Of a stretch of 64,000 nt of DNA, positions 46,975 to 60,159 are shown one piece after another. Source of the stretch: Adineta vaga (Eukaryota; Animalia; Rotifera); the NCBI GenBank assembly GCA_021613535.1, contig CP075493.1:4526001-4590000 (forward strand). The letters are read 5' to 3'. Numbering within the stretch: position 1 is the stretch's first letter; the number at the start of each line of letters is the position of its first letter. The position numbers and the translations under genes are program-made. The notes beneath the pieces were generated by a model that worked only from the letters and a program-made list of their open reading frames with translations, made no database searches and was not told the origin of the DNA.

Positions 46975-47550
46975 ATCAGTATGGAAATGAAATGCATAAA
47001 TCATCAAAGGCAAACTCTGTTCCATTTTGTGCTAGGCCATCCACAGGAGTACCTCCTGAGGCTGTGAAAATCAGCATATCTAGATTTGTACAACTACCAC
47101 AACTAATAGTTGTCGAATTCACTGTGTTTATGAGGAAACTTCCAGATATTTTGTTCACACCAAAACGATAAGCATATATCCACCATTCGAGATTTAAACG
47201 CCAACCAGCTGATATTTTAACTTGATCAAATGAAAAACTTGTACCATTTGCTGATTGTATTCGAACAAATGCACCTCCTGGATTATAAGCAACATATGAT
47301 GGAGAACTTTGAGCTATTGGATAGCCACTCAATGGTACTGTTGATGAATTGAGATACATGACATTGGTCCAATTGAGATTATTATAGCCATTTGGTACAA
47401 TACCAGATGTTGCAGTTTGCCCAGCAATATCATCAAATGTTATACGTGTTGTACAGACTAAGATAGAACGAAAGATAATACAAAAACTAGCATAATACAG
47501 GTAAAACAGATGGACACTTACAAGGTTTTGTAGTGGTTGTGGTTGTCGTC
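46975..47550. repeat. Direct repeat copy A (matches 49561-50137)
   Basis: Two substitutions seen across the ~480-bp exon; similarity extends through the intron into the end of the stalk exon. Confidence 0.95.
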
Positions 47551-48261
47551 GAAGTAGTTGTCGCGGATGTTGTGGATGTTGTTGTCGCTGTCGTAACACT
47601 GGTAGTGGTAGCAGTAGTGGCCGAAGTTGATGTTGTACTGGTTGATGAAGTTGTTAGTACGAGAACTTGTTGTTGAAGTACTGCTCGAAGAAGTGGATGA
47701 ACTAGTTGAAGTAGTTGTAGTCGTTGCACTTGTAGTAGTTGCAGTCGTTGCACTTGTACTAGTCGTCGATGTTCCTGTAGTTTGTGTAATAGCATTTGCC
47801 GTTTTAGCTAAAATCAATGATTGATATCTATGTATACTGATAGTCTATAGAAATCTTTTTTTTCTAATTTTTGACAATAGAAAAAAAGAAGATAGAATTA
47901 AAAATATGAAGATGTATTCACCTGGACTGACTAAATAGAGTGAGAGAAGTGTTGCAAAAGCTATTCCCATAGTTAATGCACCAGCAATAAGACCGAGTAA
48001 AACTGGTGTTGAACATGGACAGCAGCAGAGTGAACTACATAGATTAAAATATTACAAATAACAAATAAGAACATGGCAATATAAATAATACTCGAAAAAA
48101 CCGGATTTTCTTTGTCGTCGTCGTTCATACTCTGAATCATTGTTTTGTATTTTCTTTTCTTGACTGCTGTATGATGTATTCTCTAGATCATCATTCTCAA
48201 TATCCATCATTGCCGGTAGTTGCAACGGAGACCCTGCTTCTCGAAGTTTTTGTTGAGACAT
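46976..48261 (-). CDS. TM + Thr-rich stalk + ITFDD-type C-terminal domain protein, copy 1 (apparent frameshift near 47655)
   Basis: Exons: MSQQKL.., TM LLGLIAGALTMGIAFATLLSLYLV, Thr stalk, terminal domain RITFDDI..PNGYNNLNW..FAFDDLCI. Confidence 0.7.
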
Positions 48262-49560: not shown

Positions 49561-50137
49561 ATCAGTATGGAAATGAAATGCATAAATCATCAAAGGCAAA
49601 CTCTGTTCCATTTTGTGCTAGGCCATCCACAGGAGTACCTCCTGAGGCTGTGAAAATCAGCATATCTAGATTTGTACAACTACCACAACTAATAGTTGTC
49701 GAATTCACTGTGTTTATGAGGAAACTTCCAGATATTTTGTTCACACCAAAACGATAAGCATATATCCACCATTCGAGATTTAAACGCCAACCAGCTGATA
49801 TTTTAACTTGATCAAATGAAAAACTTGTACCATTCGCTGATTGTATTCGAACAAATGCACCTTCTGGATTATAAGCAACATATGATGGAGAACTTTGAGC
49901 TATTGGATAGCCACTCAATGGTACTGTTGATGAATTGAGATACATGACATTGGTCCAATTGAGATTATTATAGCCATTTGGTACAATACCAGATGTTGCA
50001 GTTTGCCCAGCAATATCATCAAATGTTATACGTGTTGTACAGACTAAGATAGAACGAAAGATAATACAAAACCTGGCAAAGTACAGGTATAAGATATTGA
50101 CACTTACAAGGTTTTGTAGTGGTTGTGGTTGTCGTCG
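49561..50137. repeat. Direct repeat copy B (matches 46975-47550)
   Basis: Offset of 2586 bp from copy A. Confidence 0.95.
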
Positions 50138-52214: not shown

Positions 52215-53243
52215 TTACAATTGACCTTTCCTTCTATACATAAGATGAGTCTGTCTTTCATTGCGATCATATCGTTGTCTATTTCCGTAAAGACAACATA
52301 GAATTTTTTTCAATACATTTATCCATTGATGTCGAAATATCTCCGATGAACATAAATAAATAAAAAAACTTGTATAATTACTCCAAAAAAGTAGATATGA
52401 TGTCTGATGAATAAGATTTTCTTTTGCTTGTAATAATAAGGATTTCGAACCATACATACTACTTAACCAATAACAGTTAAAAACTGAATATGGTATGGAG
52501 GCAATTGTCGATTTGATTGATTGAAGAATAAGCATGAAGATTAGTTGTTGATTAATTCGTCGAATATGTACGGATCGATATTTTGTTCGTCTATGACGAT
52601 GATGAATATTCTTATGTGTAAGATAACCAAATATCATCATAATAAGGGGAGGTAGAAATCCATTAAATATACAAACATAAATTAATTGTACAACATAACA
52701 AGTTATATGACGAGCAGGATTTGAACATATATAACGATTTTCTTGAAAAGCATGATAGAAACGTGTTGCACAAAAGAGAATTGGAATCGAAATAATTGAC
52801 CAAAAACAAAGAATTAATTTAATGCAACGAATACCAATATGACGACGAGCATAATACCAACGAGTACTTTCTGAAGAACTTAATAAATATTGTGAAATAC
52901 TAGCAGATGCTGTTAATGTTCCTGATGATACCGTAAAAACATAGGCAAAATAACTTTTCGTTTTACAATAAGCTAAATTATTTATTGTCCAATCATAATG
53001 AAAACCATATTGAAGAATATTTGCTAATGGTTCAAGACTTAAATGCATAAAATCACATATCGATGCTACAAGAAGATAGAGTGAACAAGCGCGACTACTA
53101 TATGTTTGTTGAAGAAATGTTCCAATGTTCATAATTGTACCAAATAAACAAACAATATACAAAAATATACCTATGTATTTAGTTAGCTGCTCCGAAAGAT
53201 AATTATAATGGAGTAAACGTAAATCATTCGTAGTGTTTGTCAT
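52215..53243 (-). CDS. Orphan class A-like GPCR, intronless
   Basis: FGTIMNIGTF, CSLYLLVASICD, YCKTKSY, PPLIMMIFG, QQLIFMLILQ, NYTSFFIY..SEIFR. Confidence 0.85.
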   Translation of the reverse strand: MTNTTNDLRLLHYNYLSEQLTKYIGIFLYIVCLFGTIMNIGTFLQQTYSSRACSLYLLVASICDFMHLSLEPLANILQYGFHYDWTINNLAYCKTKSYFAYVFTVSSGTLTASASISQYLLSSSESTRWYYARRHIGIRCIKLILCFWSIISIPILFCATRFYHAFQENRYICSNPARHITCYVVQLIYVCIFNGFLPPLIMMIFGYLTHKNIHHRHRRTKYRSVHIRRINQQLIFMLILQSIKSTIASIPYSVFNCYWLSSMYGSKSLLLQAKENLIHQTSYLLFWSNYTSFFIYLCSSEIFRHQWINVLKKILCCLYGNRQRYDRNERQTHLMYRRKGQL

Positions 53244-54837
53244 TTTACTCAAAGAAAAGATAATGTATGTATGTAAAGAAAAGTAAATTATATATAGAAG
53301 TTAGGGAAACCGTAGGTTGTGTTTTATCTCATATAAAAGAACTTTTAGATCAGTGAAAAAACGGATAAATAAAACGAAGATTAGCCTTTAATAACATGTT
53401 GGTAGTTTTGAGAAAGGAAAAAATAACTGTTATTTGACGTATTTGTATTTTTTTTATGACATTGGTAACATTCTACTTATTATTGATGGAAGAAAAAGAT
53501 CTGTTTTCTTTTTGAATAAAATCATGTCACTGTTTTATTTCTTTACAGTTCAGACGTGTGTTAAATATTCATTATAGCCTTTTGAGTTAAAAGAATATAT
53601 CTTATAAAAACTAATTATTCAATATACATAAGTCTGCGGATATAATATACTTTTGTTTTCCTGAATAGCCAAAGTAAATAGATTTTACTTGAGAATACTG
53701 CGATTCTATTATCTAATGAAATAAGAGCTCAAAAATTAGGTTTCTTTCAATTAATTTTTAAATAGTCTGTTTGACGTATGAGTATAAAGATCAAAAAAAG
53801 CTTCATTCTTCCATGTACAATCATAAATCAAATAACAAAAGAGTTCATTGAGTATCACCTAACCTATACTGACGGTTGATTTCAATTCATACGTTTTTAC
53901 TAATATTTTATTTTAAATTATGTCATTTATTTCAATATACTTCATACGAAGATTTTCAAAAATGAATTATATCTGACGTTGAATTGGTCTTGAGGATTAG
54001 AAGTTGTTTTTGCTATCGATAAACAGTTCATTAACACAGTATTATGACAGTTGAGTAGAAAATAATCAAAAAAAAACATCGCGATACGTTCGGGAAGAAT
54101 TAAACTCTTTTTTTTTCTTTGATAAGAGAGTGTGAAGAACCACTGCTTTCAACAAATAAGATTTAAAAGCAAATTAACTACATATGTATGTGAGAAAAGA
54201 AATTTAATGTCAATAGTAAATCTTACCAAAGAGACTTAGTTTAGTTATCTGTAAACGAAGATAGTAGTATCAATCTAAAAAGCTTTTTGTGTGTCATGTA
54301 AATACATGGGTGATGTATTTTATAAGTGAATAAGATCTCGATCGTTGTGCAAGAGAAAAGCAAAATACTCAAAGACCTATAGATTAATCAGCGTGATAAT
54401 CTACTCTCATATGATACTATTTTTACATTTGTCTATTTCGACAGGGAATTCAGCAGATAGAAAATGAGACGAGGAATGAAAAGTAAAGTTGTAATTAAAG
54501 TTCTTTTGCATGAAGCTCAAGGGAAATTGATGACTGACTAGTGAAAGATGTATAGAATAACTCATTCGAAAATTCCATGTATAAACATATCTTGAACAGA
54601 CTATCTGTCAAGAAGAAAAGTTCTTTTCAACTAAATATTTAGATTACATCTTGTCGTTGATAGAAGCTTAGACTTTTTTTTGAAAAGAAAAGAAACGAAA
54701 TTAAAATTTAAAAAATCTTTCAAATATTTAGTAGGATCTATTACATTATTCAAAAAAGCTTACAGAACTGAGAATATTTCATATGGAACTTATTTCGTCT
54801 GTATTTTATTGACAAAAAAACTAAAACTGCACAAAAT

Positions 54838-57800
54838 TCAATCAAAAAAGTCAAAAATTTGAATAATTGTCATTGAATTGTCCTTCTCAAATGGTACACA
54901 TTCTTGTAGAAATGTAAATAAATATTTTATATTCACACGAACATAGACAATTGTTTGGTTTTTGTCCACCGGATTTTTATATTCAAATACAATATCAAGG
55001 TTTGATCGTTGTTTTAACCATAGAAGACGTTCAGTATTATTATTGTTAATCGTTATTTCAATTTGCATTGATTCAGTTACATTTGATATCGATATAAGTT
55101 TGATTTTTGATTGATGAGAAGCTAATTTTTTCAATATAGATGTAAAACTACCATGGCGAGGTACGCGTACAGCGTAGAGACCATCTTTTGATAACTTTTG
55201 TATATCATCAATATTTTCATCAATACTTTGTTTAAAATCAAAATTATCATCAATATTTTCAAGAATCAGTTGTTCATATTCAGGTTCCAATCGAATACCG
55301 CCAACATATCGAATAAGAAAAGAAACAATTGATAATTGAATAAATGCTCCTGTTAATAAAATACCAACAACACTATTCATAAGAAATCCAGTTGAAGTCA
55401 AAACAGCTTTTTTAAAACCATATTTTCCAATAGCTAATTCTGTTTCTGTGCGAAATAATGACCAATAAATCGAAAGAAATTTGATAAACGGAAAGAAAAA
55501 GAATGGAGTATGATTTAAATAGTGTCCAAATTGAGTAGCTATACGCACAACTAACCATTCACATGGTCGATAATAATTTGATTCAGGTGAAGCTTTGATT
55601 TGATGAAAATTTACATTTTCAGTTATTTCATTTATATCATTTGTATTCATTTTTTCTTCACGTTCGGGTTTACGTACAACAATCATAATATCATCTGTCG
55701 GATCATCTTCCTGTTCATTGTAAACGAATGTATCTTGAAAACCAGCTTGTCTTAAACAAGAACGCCATTGTTCAATAGTACGAAATGCTCGTATTTCATT
55801 GATTTCTGATTCATAATCAACACGAGTAACTGCATTGAAAACCATATGTGCAACATCTAATAATGGTTTAAGTTCTTCGTATGCATGATGTTCTCGAAAG
55901 AGAAATAAACCATTTGGACGAAGAATTCGATGAATCATTTGAAAATAAATCTTCAATTGATCTTGTGGTAAATGATGTAAACCCATATAACAAACAACAA
56001 GATCAATTGATTCACTTGGAATAGGTACATCAGTTAGATTCGAAAAATTATATGGAATAAAAGTACCAATTGAAAAGAGACTATTTCGTTCAACAATATC
56101 TGTTAAACGTTCACGTTCATTCACAATATAAACACGACCATCTTTTATTTTCAATATTTGACGTAATTCATTAATACATCGACCACCATCACCAATACTA
56201 ACGATATCTTTAATCTAAATAAAATACAAGAAAAAAAAACATTCAAAGGATAAAACGATGAACAGTATTTACCTTTCCACAATATCCTAAATGTTTGAAA
56301 ATTGTAATCTGCTGTCTTAACATATCTTTAATTTGCGATCGAAGTTGACGAATTTGTTTAATAATTGCAAATATTTTTCGCATAAAAGCAAACTGTCGTG
56401 TTTTTAACGTATGTTCTAATTCTCGATAGATATCATGATCATTTTTATTCATTGGATTTCTTACAGCTCGATTGACATAATTGAAAATTACATGAGCAGG
56501 TTCAGCATTGAAAACTGTACGAAGAAATTTACGAAATTTTTCTCGGAAAATTTCATCTGTAATCACTCGATGAAATGAATTCATTCGACGTTGTTCAACA
56601 ATAACAAATTCATCAGTCAATAATTCGATTTCTTTCGATTGTTGATCATCTCTACGAAAAGAAGTATCTCGTTCAGGTCGAAAATTTTCATACCAATCAT
56701 TTGAAAACAATCCAATGGGATCATAAGTATGTTTTTTTTCGAAAAATTCTGCAAACATTGGATATGCTTGAAGAATTTGTTCATAGGAATAATGTTGTCG
56801 ATAAGGAAGATAGAATGTTCCATGACATTGAAAAGCTAATTGAATTAATTGTTGATGAATATCTTTTACTTCATGATCACCGAGGTCATTACGTTTAATT
56901 CGAAAATAGAAAACAAATGCATAACAATCATTTCGTTGTGCATAGGCAAGAAATGTTAAATCATCTTTCTTAACAAATCGTATGGTTAAATTTAATAGAA
57001 AGACATTATCATAGTGCTTTTGAAGTATTGGTATTAATTGAGTATACCATTGATGAAAATAATCTTTAGGAATGAAATATTCTTGAAGAATAAATGTATC
57101 ATCATAATATGTTAGAGGTTGATAGAGTAATGCCATTGGTTTAGCTGATTCGTACATGGTAGTATTTCGATCGGTTGAATAAGTTAGATCTAATGGTTGA
57201 GCAGCGATTTTTTCTAATGCAAAACGTATTCGACGAAATGGACGATGTTGAGCAAGATAAGTGTAGATTAAATGTTGACGTGGATGCATTACACGTGCTT
57301 CATCACATAAATCAGCAACAGTACCTGATGTTCCTGATTCTTGACGAAAAACAAACATTAAAATATTATTTGGACGAACAAGATCTACACGAGCTATTTT
57401 AATTTCAATCGTTGGATCATTGAGAAAATCTTCATAATATGTTGAAAATTGATCAGACTATTGATGACAGAAAACATAAAAAGACATCTCTTTTCTAATA
57501 GAAAGTTTCTACCTGTAATCGTATATATTCTAGTGAAGTTTTCACATTTGCTACTGTTTTTAATCTTAATCTTGTAATAATTCCAAAAAGTCCATAACCA
57601 CCAATCATTAATGAAAATAATTCCGAATCTTTTTCTCGATTACATTCATTTTTCTTTCCATTCATATCAATATATTCAATACTAATAACTGATTCATACA
57701 TAGCATAATCAGACGTTATACCATGAGCATTGACTGATATAGTTCCAGCTACACTAAATGTACAATAACTTTGCATGACGACAGGTGATCGACCATAGGA

Positions 57801-58913
57801 ATTCAATTTTTTAATCACATGTGTCCATGTTGCACCAGCCTCAACGAGAACTTCTTTCGTTGATTCATCATATTCAACACGATTGAGATATTTCAAATCA
57901 CAAACATAATCTCGTCTATTTCGCTTTCGAGATGGTAATGTTTGTCCACCCATGGTATGTGCTTGTCCACGAACTGATATTGTTCGATCTTGAGATTTAG
58001 CTTGGCAAATTAAATATTCGATATCATTTATTGTACGAGGATAGAATAATGAATAAACTTGAGTTTCATTTAAACGTGAAACATCATCGAGTAGAATTTC
58101 ACCGGTAAAATCTAAATTAAACTTTGATTTCGACCAAAACCATTGATAGAATTGATAGAAACAGATGAAGATAATTATCAAACCTATAATCGAACGATTA
58201 GTTAAAAAATAATAAACTCCAATCGAAACATTTGGAAATAATCGAATCATTGTATTCAATACAATTAAACTAAGTACAGATAATGGTGTAGGAATTGTAA
58301 TCATCAGATATTCTCGAAGAATTGTCATTTGTTTTGTAAATATTTTCAGAAAACGTTTGGAAATTCGATAAGTTAAACGATTGGTTAATGATGTATAAAT
58401 ACCAAGTAAGAAGAGAATAATTGTCATCAAAGTTGAATAACGATGAAGAGTTAAACTTTTACGAATTTCTTGCCAATATCCAATTTGAACGACTGTTTGC
58501 GGAGATCGTTCATCATTATCATCGTCACCGGTATTGAAAAATGTGAATGAAAATAGAGAGAATTTAAAAATAAGAATTAATATATAAATAAAAACGGGAA
58601 CTTCAATAATAGTTGGTTTTCGCATAAGTGATTTTATTACTTTTCGAAAAATATCCAAGCATTTTTGAAGTGATGTAAAAAATTTTGGTATTCCCAATAA
58701 ACAAATAAGAAGAATTAATGTTGTGGCAAGAGTATTGATTTTCCATAGATGGAAAATATATGAAAAATATTGAATAATATTCAAAAAATCCAAACGAAGT
58801 AATATTCGAAAAAGTTGATAAAACCAATCCGAAAGACAAACTACTGCCAAGGCATAGGCGATATACATTTTTTCAGCACGATTTTGTACCATTGGTTTTA
58901 TATTTCTCTCCAT
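54838..58913 (-). CDS. ~1320-aa fusion: multi-TM N-terminus + FAD-binding (PCMH/VAO-type, ALO/DprE1-like) oxidase + class I SAM methyltransferase + C-terminal domain; 3 exons
   Basis: Introns 57458-57512 and 56215-56272 join the three ORFs in frame; SVRGQAHTMGGQ, VEAGATW, SVAGTISVNAHG, GGYGLFGII, GTFYLPY, YDPIGLFSN; DLVVCYMGLHHL..ILRPNGLFLFREH. Confidence 0.88.
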
Positions 58914-60159
58914 ACTTTTGACGATTGTTAGCTGTCAAATGTTTTTTACCAATATTTAAGTATATTCTTGCACAATCATAAGGTAAGGTAATTACTGGAG
59001 GAGAAAGAAAATAAAAGCATGTGTGTGATTCAAGGTTATTGTATTCCGTCGTTGCTGTGGTTGCTTGAATATAATAACACCGATTTCATCAAGCAGAAAA
59101 AAATTATAAATAGGGCAAATGTTTTTCTTTCGCGAGTTTCTTCAAACAACACGCGTTGAATAAACAATGTGAATGTTCTATATGATTGAAAGAATAAAAT
59201 CGATGGATATACTTTAGCAACAAAACAACTATTGATTCATACGTAGAATAATACCAACAGAAAAAGAAATGGAATGGAAGAAAAACAACACATTTATGAC
59301 GTGACTTATTTTTCTCAATCGAATGAAACAGTAGATACTCATGATTATAGGACTATATCTTTGTTGTTATAAATTTCAGTATAATAGGAGCATCATTTCG
59401 AATATCTGATGAATAATGTTGCGATTTATCCAATAAAATTAAAATAAAAAGTCCATCTGTTGAAGTTTGTGTTATGGGCCATAGTTAAGTACTTCTATTA
59501 TTATTGAACACGTTCAAATCAGTAGAGAAGATCTTCCTTTGATCGTCCTTGAATAAATGATCAATTGTTTTCTCGTACAAACATTATCGAACAAAGATTA
59601 TAGACTCGATAAGTTCTTCATCCATATCAACGCCAATTATGTTCATCATCATCTGTTGATGGTTCACTATCTTTAAATCGATCCGATACTCGTGGCGTAT
59701 CATTATTATTGTCATTGATGTTTCGTCTTTCAAATTTTCGATTATGTTAATAAACAATCTGCACATTATTGTTATTATTTAAATCAATTCGAGTTAATTG
59801 AAAATTTGTTAAGGCATATATGACATGATATTCCTCGTCGATCTGTATAGATGTGCGGAGATTCAAAGCACGTGTGATTATTTCACAATGAATTGCATTT
59901 GAAGTCATTTGAATTCGATAGAATTTCTTCATGATAGAGCTCCTCTATATATTCTAGCTGGTTCTTGCACAACAGTTTTATTAGTAATCCTTAGAATAAT
60001 ATTTTCAGCTTCATCGTATAGCGAATATGTAAACTATAGTGGAAAGAAAATATCACCGACAATTTAATAAAAGATTTTATTTAGCTTCCTGTAAAAAGTA
60101 CAAAATATGTTGTAAGATCAGCTATGATTCATATATATGAATTCAATGAAATGAAATAT

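What the first reader, a model, noticed from the sequence alone, without database searches (positions are those of the whole stretch)
54838..58913. Spliced mega-fusion of membrane anchor, FAD oxidase, methyltransferase and an unknown domain
Seen: three ORFs join through two canonical introns (55 and 58 nt) into 1320 aa. Established: RGxxHxxGGQ and GxISVNAHG..GGYGLFG mark VAO/PCMH flavoproteins related to aldonolactone oxidase/DprE1; GLHH..LRPxG marks class I methyltransferases. The SAM motif I is atypical (VSIGDGGR). The tail (NYYRPCEWLVV...HTPFFFFPF..YW) recalls a 'PEW' domain I remember as linked to such oxidases in bacteria (unverified). Inference: a domesticated foreign oxidise-then-methylate small-molecule or lipid pathway that has gained introns and a multi-TM anchor.
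Basis: partly seen in the sequence, partly recalled or inferred. Interest (0 to 1): 0.82.

Follow-up and report, generated by a model that had tools for sequence, protein, structure and literature searches.

The report
Borrowed oxidase-methyltransferase fusion in rotifers
A tiny freshwater animal (a bdelloid rotifer) expresses a four-part enzyme gene (membrane anchor, flavin oxidase, methyl-adding enzyme and an unnamed domain) that its ancestor most likely took, already fused, from a single-celled eukaryote or giant virus; the same unstudied enzyme occurs in amoebae, giant viruses and Legionella-type bacteria, and its substrate is unknown.

Summary
The gene is real. Three exons on the minus strand are joined by 55- and 58-nt GT-AG introns into 1320 aa. 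Single RNA contigs from two studies remove both introns. It matches Adineta vaga model I4U23_001477.

Domains: multi-TM N-terminus; VAO/PCMH flavoprotein (DprE1/aldonolactone-oxidase fold, probable flavin-linking His319, catalytic Lys replaced by invariant Tyr); class I methyltransferase; and a 270-aa tail with no Pfam or close PDB match (three-helix bundle plus two ferredoxin-like folds).

It is not DHCR24. The oxidase-methyltransferase-tail fusion is not a rotifer invention: it occurs in many protists, Tupanviruses and other giant viruses, and some bacteria. In bacteria the tail gene sat beside, or was fused to, the oxidase in 25 of 26 genomes checked.

Bdelloid copies (three genera) form one clade with both introns shared, among protist sequences. 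The nearest protist proteins also carry TM N-termini. Grouping with Thecamonas is rejected; a viral or bacterial donor is not. No named non-bdelloid animal was found.

Best reading: ancient transfer of a ready-made membrane enzyme that oxidises and methylates a lipid-linked or amphipathic substrate (substrate inferred). I found no paper on the family.

The parts
57513..58913 (-). Exon 1 (aa 1-467): N-terminal membrane region and FAD-binding PCMH domain
58128..58913 (-). N-terminal multi-TM region (aa 1-262); 4-6 hydrophobic segments by Kyte-Doolittle; conserved in bdelloids (27-58% identity); single copy in this genome
   Evidence: hydropathy only, no topology predictor
57513..58106 (-). FAD-binding PCMH domain (aa ~270-467): RGQAH319TMGGQ, QSYCTF, SVNAHG, GGYGLFG; His319 is the probable covalent flavin link
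   Evidence: covalent link inferred from family knowledge
57458..57512 (-). Intron 1, 55 nt, phase 0, GT-AG; same position in Rotaria and Didymodactylos
56669..57457 (-). Substrate-binding cap of the VAO-type flavoprotein (aa 468-~730): LQE593YF, N623xTxR627, GTFYLPY686
56273..56626 (-). Helical subdomain leading into the methyltransferase (aa ~745-862)
56215..56272 (-). Intron 2, 58 nt, phase 0, GT-AG; same position in Rotaria and Didymodactylos
55666..56214 (-). Class I SAM-methyltransferase fold (aa 863-1045): atypical motif I (SIG870DGG873), acidic residue after strand 2 (E895), invariant GLHH, R969xH971, H985, N989, E1002xR1004, D1033
54838..55608 (-). Unnamed C-terminal 'EW..HTP' tail (aa ~1065-1320): three-helix bundle with one hydrophobic helix plus two ferredoxin-like alpha/beta folds; stop codon 54840-54838

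Best explanation
An intact, expressed single-copy gene of the bdelloid Adineta vaga, acquired horizontally once, before Adineta, Rotaria and Didymodactylos split, as a ready-made flavoprotein-methyltransferase-tail fusion. The donor was most likely a protist whose copy was already membrane-anchored; a giant virus is not excluded. Two introns were then gained. Shown: splicing, architecture, folds, bdelloid monophyly, shared introns, tail-oxidase linkage. Inferred mechanism: a membrane-bound two-step tailoring enzyme. The flavoprotein, with FAD probably bound covalently at His319, oxidises a CH-OH of a sugar or polyol group, as its nearest folds DprE1, galactonolactone dehydrogenase and alditol oxidase do. 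The substrate is probably lipid-linked or amphipathic. The class I domain methylates the same molecule. The tail is the oxidase's partner, docking it on the membrane or presenting the substrate. I put the origin part at about 0.8 for HGT and 0.55 for a protist donor, and the chemistry at about 0.35.
For: Splicing and one transcript. Purifying selection on alleles. Catalytic domains 85-90% identical among Adineta species against 57% for the anchor. Bdelloid clade 100/100 with Didymodactylos basal, and best tree joins it to TM-anchored protist proteins at 76/81; a clade with Thecamonas is rejected, p-AU 1e-6. No named non-bdelloid animal among 83 word-search hits or the exhaustive top 150. Shared introns. 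Fold Z 36.0 to DprE1, 35.7 to GLDH, 34.3 to alditol oxidase, 31.1 to cytokinin dehydrogenase, 28 or less for other VAO enzymes; MT Z about 16 to small-molecule methyltransferases. Tail beside or fused to the oxidase in 25 of 26 bacterial genomes checked, and in several without an adjacent MT.
Against: Donor unresolved: bdelloids with giant viruses (p-AU 0.27) or next to bacteria (0.12) are not rejected. The protist anchors show no provable homology to the bdelloid anchor (hhalign probability 5%). The catalytic Lys of DprE1 and the HWxK motif of aldonolactone oxidases are replaced by an invariant Tyr, so the substrate differs from every solved relative. Many members (viral, dictyostelid, kinetoplastid) lack a TM anchor. 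Bacterial neighbourhoods show no conserved pathway genes. Most metagenomic hits are unnamed, so an unannotated animal copy cannot be excluded.
Confidence: 0.5

Rival explanations
1. Methylate-then-reduce lipid modification like BfaB/BfaA (10-methylstearate): the MT makes a methylene intermediate on a membrane lipid and the flavoprotein reduces it.
For: Precedent for an FAD-linked oxidoreductase plus a SAM methyltransferase acting on membrane fatty acids (PMC5660069); membrane anchor; weak hits of the MT family to lipid and quinone methyltransferases.
Against: The MT does not hit cyclopropane-synthase (CMAS) models in the bdelloid protein. A His at the covalent-flavin position (65 of 70 rows) is typical of oxidases (own knowledge). 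A DHCR24/BfaA-like gene appears to lie elsewhere in this genome (C4, 30% over 110 aa; its identity rests on recalled motifs).
Confidence: 0.12
2. Detoxification or catabolism of a soluble microbial metabolite (oxidise and methylate a xenobiotic or food-derived compound), with the anchor only placing the enzyme in a gut or vacuole membrane.
For: Distribution in bacterivores and amoeba-associated microbes; MT nearest to small-molecule and natural-product methyltransferases; many members are unanchored.
Against: Single copy and strongly conserved catalytic domains over the whole bdelloid radiation suit one fixed substrate better than broad detoxification; giant viruses keep the full fusion.
Confidence: 0.2
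3. Vertical inheritance from an early eukaryote with loss in all other sampled animals, fungi and choanoflagellates.
For: The family occurs in Amoebozoa, Discoba, Rhizaria, Alveolata, Apusozoa and a green alga; the bdelloid stem is long and its place among eukaryotes is weakly supported.
Against: The only sampled opisthokont relative, Thecamonas, is rejected as sister (p-AU 1e-6) and belongs to another subfamily. No named animal outside bdelloids. The family is patchy and interleaved with viruses. Bdelloid HGT, including from protists, is common (PMC4632278).
Confidence: 0.1
4. The methyltransferase fold does something other than methyl transfer (as RquA or RdmB do), using its His-rich invariant site.
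For: Shortened motif I (GDxG); invariant H942, H943, H971, H985, R969, E1002, R1004, D1033; best NCBIfam hit of the A. vaga domain is RquA, though far below cut-off (25 of 175 bits).
Against: G870, G873 and the acidic residue after strand 2 (D/E in 73 of 78) are kept, as expected for SAM binding; the HH..L.P.G....DH pattern also occurs in YcgJ-type methyltransferases.
Confidence: 0.1

Closest known systems
DprE1 (decaprenylphosphoryl-ribose 2'-oxidase; NF053785)
   Same: Best fold match of the flavoprotein part (Z 36.0, rmsd 2.8, 391 aligned); C-terminal cap motif aligns; membrane-associated lipid-sugar substrate is the model for the proposed chemistry.
   Different: 16% identity; 34 of 500 bits for exon 1; the Lys of GGRLYTAKD is an invariant Tyr; carries a His at the flavin-link position; fused to MT and tail; no DprE2 partner seen.
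Aldonolactone oxidoreductases (GULO, ALO, GLDH) and alditol oxidase
   Same: Fold Z 35.7 and 34.3; flavin-binding motif with His; Pfam ALO weak hit.
   Different: HWxK motif absent (YLPY); ExR pair appears as TxR; 54 of 397 bits for TIGR01678.
Uncharacterised FAD-MT-tail proteins of protists, Tupanviruses and bacteria (e.g. Tupanvirus 'oxidoreductase FAD-binding' 1094 aa, Arcella EP01124 P030358, Pharyngomonas EP00761 P001944, dictyostelids, Bodo, Thecamonas, Legionella steelei Lste_1369 plus its neighbour)
   Same: Same domain order and motifs, 34-40% identity over the whole core. This is the family the gene belongs to.
   Different: No function or family name found; bdelloid-specific introns and anchor sequence; one subfamily carries a ~450-aa insert between MT and tail; in Legionellales the tail is a separate upstream gene.
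BfaA/BfaB 10-methylstearate pathway
   Same: FAD-linked oxidoreductase plus SAM methyltransferase acting together on membrane lipids.
   Different: Two genes; the methyltransferase here gives no CMAS hit; BfaA is proposed as a reductase.
DHCR24 / Delta24-sterol reductase
   Same: PCMH FAD domain, membrane anchor.
   Different: No MT or tail; not among fold or profile hits; a separate DHCR24-like gene appears to lie elsewhere in this genome.

Membership tests
VAO/PCMH flavoprotein superfamily | PCMH FAD-binding domain plus cap domain | tested here: met
   PF01565 68 bits against cut-off 26; model of the A. ricciae orthologue aligns over about 390 residues at Z 36
VAO/PCMH flavoprotein superfamily | Covalent histidyl-FAD | not testable with these tools
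   His319 kept in 65 of 70 aligned rows, Phe in 5 bacterial-type rows; needs protein
Aldonolactone oxidoreductases | HWxK motif (PMC9602106) | tested here: not met
   Equivalent stretch is GTFYLPY, Tyr686 invariant
Aldonolactone oxidoreductases | ExR pair (PMC9602106) | tested here: inconclusive
   Family has N623-x-T625-x-R627; equivalence to ExR is inferred, not shown by a residue-level alignment
DprE1 | Score above NF053785 cut-off and Lys of GGRLYTAKD | tested here: not met
   33.7 of 500 bits for exon 1 alone; single-ORF bacterial relatives reach 78-103; Lys aligns to Tyr
DHCR24 (metazoan, vertical) | Orthology to sterol reductases; single flavoprotein domain | tested here: not met
   Closest relatives are FAD-MT-tail proteins; DHCR24-like gene on C4 matches only 30% over 110 aa
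Class I SAM-dependent methyltransferases | Rossmann-like fold with SAM-binding motif I and acidic residue after strand 2 | tested here: met
   PF08241 37 bits against 21; Z about 16; G870, G873 and E895 conserved, but motif I is atypical
Class I SAM-dependent methyltransferases | Methyl transfer activity | not testable with these tools
   needs an assay
BfaB / cyclopropane fatty acid synthases | CMAS domain | tested here: not met
   No CMAS hit for exon 3 at E 0.1; one bacterial relative hits at 0.004, below cut-off
Bdelloid horizontally acquired genes | Chromosomal, intron-bearing, transcribed, nearest relatives non-metazoan, bdelloid copies monophyletic | tested here: met
   (downstream GPCR gene kept beside it in another bdelloid contig)
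Bdelloid horizontally acquired genes | Absence from monogonont rotifers and other animals | tested here: inconclusive
   No named non-bdelloid animal; most metagenomic rows are unnamed; no direct animal-genome search available

The most novel reading that the evidence does not exclude
The family defines an undescribed two-step pathway (covalent-flavin oxidation plus methylation, served by an unnamed accessory domain) that makes a specific modified lipid or glycolipid. It moved among Legionellales, giant viruses and phagotrophic protists and entered an animal lineage once, where it has been kept under strong constraint.
Probability: 0.3. Interest if true: 0.72.

Novelty: new variant of a known kind. 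Interest (0 to 1): 0.47.

Why it matters
Foreign metabolic genes in bdelloids are well known, and this gene model is already in the public annotation, so the transfer alone is unsurprising. What adds value is the family. It is a conserved flavoprotein-methyltransferase fusion with a 270-aa domain that has no Pfam, NCBIfam or close PDB match and that tracks the oxidase gene across bacterial phyla. It is present in about a fifth of sampled Legionellales genomes, in giant viruses, many protists and all sampled bdelloid genera. Its cap site (invariant Glu, Asn, Arg, Tyr) differs from every solved VAO enzyme. Tractable hosts exist (dictyostelids, Legionella species), so the unknown reaction can be tested. 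It is also a candidate case of eukaryote-to-animal or virus-to-animal transfer dated to the bdelloid ancestor by shared introns.

Tried and rejected
Alternative splice sites: other open GT-AG pairs exist for intron 2 (49 nt), but RNA uses the 58-nt one. Three separate genes: rejected by single spliced contigs and by single-ORF homologues. Contamination: rejected (chromosome-scale contig, introns, orthologues in three genera, conserved GPCR neighbour). DHCR24, DprE1 and aldonolactone oxidase membership: failed. Anchor as part of the 27-gene rotifer anchor module noted by another agent: the anchor profile finds only this locus. Homology of protist and bdelloid anchors: hhalign 5%; only Pharyngomonas clearly beats local shuffles (34 against 24.5 bits) and only without composition correction; left open. 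Tail by language-model features: no usable hit; PDB gives only generic three-helix and ferredoxin matches, Z up to 8.7. Bacterial neighbourhood clustering gave only an MFS fragment in Bacillota and a DUF4383-like small membrane protein beside tail genes. Literature searches (yitY; tupanvirus oxidoreductase; family terms; locus tag in the supplements of PMC11258130) found nothing on this family.

Full report
Observation. The window lies on contig 1 of a 100.8-Mb, six-contig genome. On the minus strand three ORFs join through introns 57512-57458 (55 nt) and 56272-56215 (58 nt), both phase 0 and GT-AG, into 1320 codons. RNA-type contigs from three runs in two studies are single records of 3.8 kb that cover all three exons and skip exactly these introns; a fourth run, from another organism label, confirms intron 2. 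They start at 58794, so the first 39 codons rest on orthologues. The public Adineta vaga protein I4U23_001477 is identical exon by exon. Of 29 allelic differences 20 are silent (pN/pS 0.12) and none alters the flavoprotein. The gene is single-copy.

The window's model was searched exon by exon, by reference. The frame check was done inside a script, and the public record of this protein was used only in local alignments and trees. The big search was run once because the transfer claim rests on absence of animal relatives.

Anatomy. Residues 1-262 hold 4-6 hydrophobic segments by hydropathy. Residues ~270-730 are a VAO/PCMH flavoprotein (PF01565 E 8e-19, PF04030 weak). The AlphaFold model of the A. 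ricciae core (pLDDT 90) matches DprE1 (Z 36.0), galactonolactone dehydrogenase (35.7), alditol oxidase (34.3) and cytokinin dehydrogenase (31.1); other VAO enzymes score 28 or less. His319 stands where VAO-type oxidases link FAD covalently (own knowledge) and is kept in 65 of 70 rows. The Lys of DprE1's GGRLYTAKD aligns to an invariant Tyr686, and the HWxK motif that marks aldonolactone oxidases (PMC9602106) is absent, so it belongs to neither family. Residues 863-1045 are a class I methyltransferase fold (PF08241 E 5e-9; Z about 16 to small-molecule methyltransferases). Motif I is short (SIGDGG), but G870, G873 and the acidic residue after strand 2 are kept, with an invariant His-rich site. 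No curated MT family comes near its cut-off. The tail (~1065-1320) folds confidently (pLDDT 93) into a three-helix bundle and two ferredoxin-like folds. It has no Pfam match and only generic PDB matches, but it matches unnamed bacterial clusters at TM 0.63-0.65, one of them fused to an FAD_binding_4/ALO protein.

Family. The same FAD-MT-tail order occurs in Adineta, Rotaria and Didymodactylos, and at 30-40% identity in Arcella, Pharyngomonas, dictyostelids, Bodo, Apiculatamorpha, Plasmodiophora, Polykrikos, Cymbomonas, Thecamonas (no tail), Tupanviruses and other giant-virus contigs, and a few bacteria. Of 123 new representatives from the exhaustive search, 64 have the full architecture. The fusion is therefore older than the rotifer copy. 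In bacteria the parts also occur apart. Among 80 loci chosen by oxidase motifs, 7 have a tail gene next to the oxidase. The tail was found in 32 of 151 genomes of Legionella steelei's order, 3 of 301 Acidobacteriota and 3 of 301 Chloroflexota. In 19 of 20 and 6 of 6 genomes whose loci were fetched, the oxidase gene is adjacent or fused. Several of these loci have no MT within 6 kb, so the tail goes with the oxidase.

Origin. Bdelloid proteins form one clade (100/100) with Didymodactylos basal. Both introns sit at identical codons in A. vaga, Rotaria socialis, Didymodactylos and a metagenomic bdelloid contig, and are absent from the protist, Thecamonas and Tupanvirus genes examined. The best tree joins bdelloids to five protist proteins (support 76/81, not strong); those with complete N-termini carry hydrophobic regions of 230-340 aa. 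A clade with Thecamonas is rejected (p-AU 1e-6); clades with giant viruses (0.27) or bacteria (0.12) are not. No named non-bdelloid animal appeared, though most metagenomic rows are unnamed. Transfer into bdelloids, also from protists, is ancient and common (PMC4632278), and amoebae are a known site of gene exchange among Legionella, giant viruses and hosts (PMC11323580). Whether the anchor came with the gene or was gained separately is open: it evolves fast (27% identity within bdelloids) and profile comparison with the protist anchors gave 5%. Two copies in Rotaria species and in Didymodactylos would fit gain before the ancient bdelloid genome doubling, with loss of one copy in A. vaga (inference; synteny not shown).

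Mechanism. Shown: one membrane-anchored polypeptide with two enzyme folds under strong constraint and a tail tied to the oxidase. Inferred: the flavoprotein oxidises a CH-OH of a sugar or polyol group, since its three nearest folds do so; the substrate is lipid-linked or amphipathic, given the anchor, the hydrophobic helix of the tail and the DprE1 precedent; the MT methylates the same molecule; the tail docks or presents it. I give this chemistry about 0.35. Rivals are detoxification of a soluble metabolite (0.2), BfaA/BfaB-like methylate-then-reduce lipid modification (PMC5660069; 0.12) and a non-methylating role of the MT fold (0.1). Bacterial neighbours gave no pathway clue.

Verdict. A real, expressed and anciently acquired gene. 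As a bdelloid HGT case it is ordinary and already annotated as a hypothetical protein. As a family it appears undescribed in the papers I could search, with an unnamed domain and a new cap-site signature. Novelty: new variant of a known kind; interest 0.47.

Noticed in passing
G000 C1:17240878-17242308 and C3:20353394-20354752 (L003/L006, L004/L007): Two 99%-identical stand-alone FAD oxidases (about 480 aa open frame) of the same broad family on a very long branch among bacterial sequences; a separate acquisition.
   Followed up: partly
G000 C4:8970239-8970595 (L008:547-2184, minus): 546-aa open frame that looks DHCR24/BfaA-like by recalled motifs; not identified further.
   Followed up: partly
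window 58932-58996, minus strand: Possible 65-nt GT-AG intron in the 5' UTR, ending 18 nt before the ATG; not covered by RNA contigs. A small separate RNA contig lies at 59153-59418.
   Followed up: no
window 58794: Contigs from three runs all end at this base; not a splice acceptor, probably an allelic branch in the assembly graph.
   Followed up: no
L011:11720-13061 (Adineta steineri): A second copy with frame changes in the MT and tail, probably decayed; its public model P0036 is a chimera.
   Followed up: partly
P0044 (Rotaria sp. Silwood2): Model joins an ADP-ribosylglycohydrolase to the cap-MT-tail part; probably a gene-calling join.
   Followed up: no
P0082:856-1343 and relatives: Dictyostelid, kinetoplastid and dinoflagellate members carry a conserved ~450-aa insert between MT and tail with no Pfam match.
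   Followed up: partly
L029:5275-5712, L085:3927-4472 and 4 other loci: A small DUF4383-like membrane protein accompanies the tail and oxidase genes in several bacterial phyla.
   Followed up: partly
L016:5923-9845: Legionellales tail gene plus oxidase-MT gene as a two-gene unit in about a fifth of sampled genomes; bacterial tails have a duplicated helical part.
   Followed up: partly
window 46976-47599 and 49562-49945: Two near-identical ORFs after Thr-rich linkers, a local tandem duplication.
   Followed up: no
window 52215-53252, minus: Rhodopsin-type GPCR gene downstream; also downstream of the orthologue in L010.
   Followed up: partly
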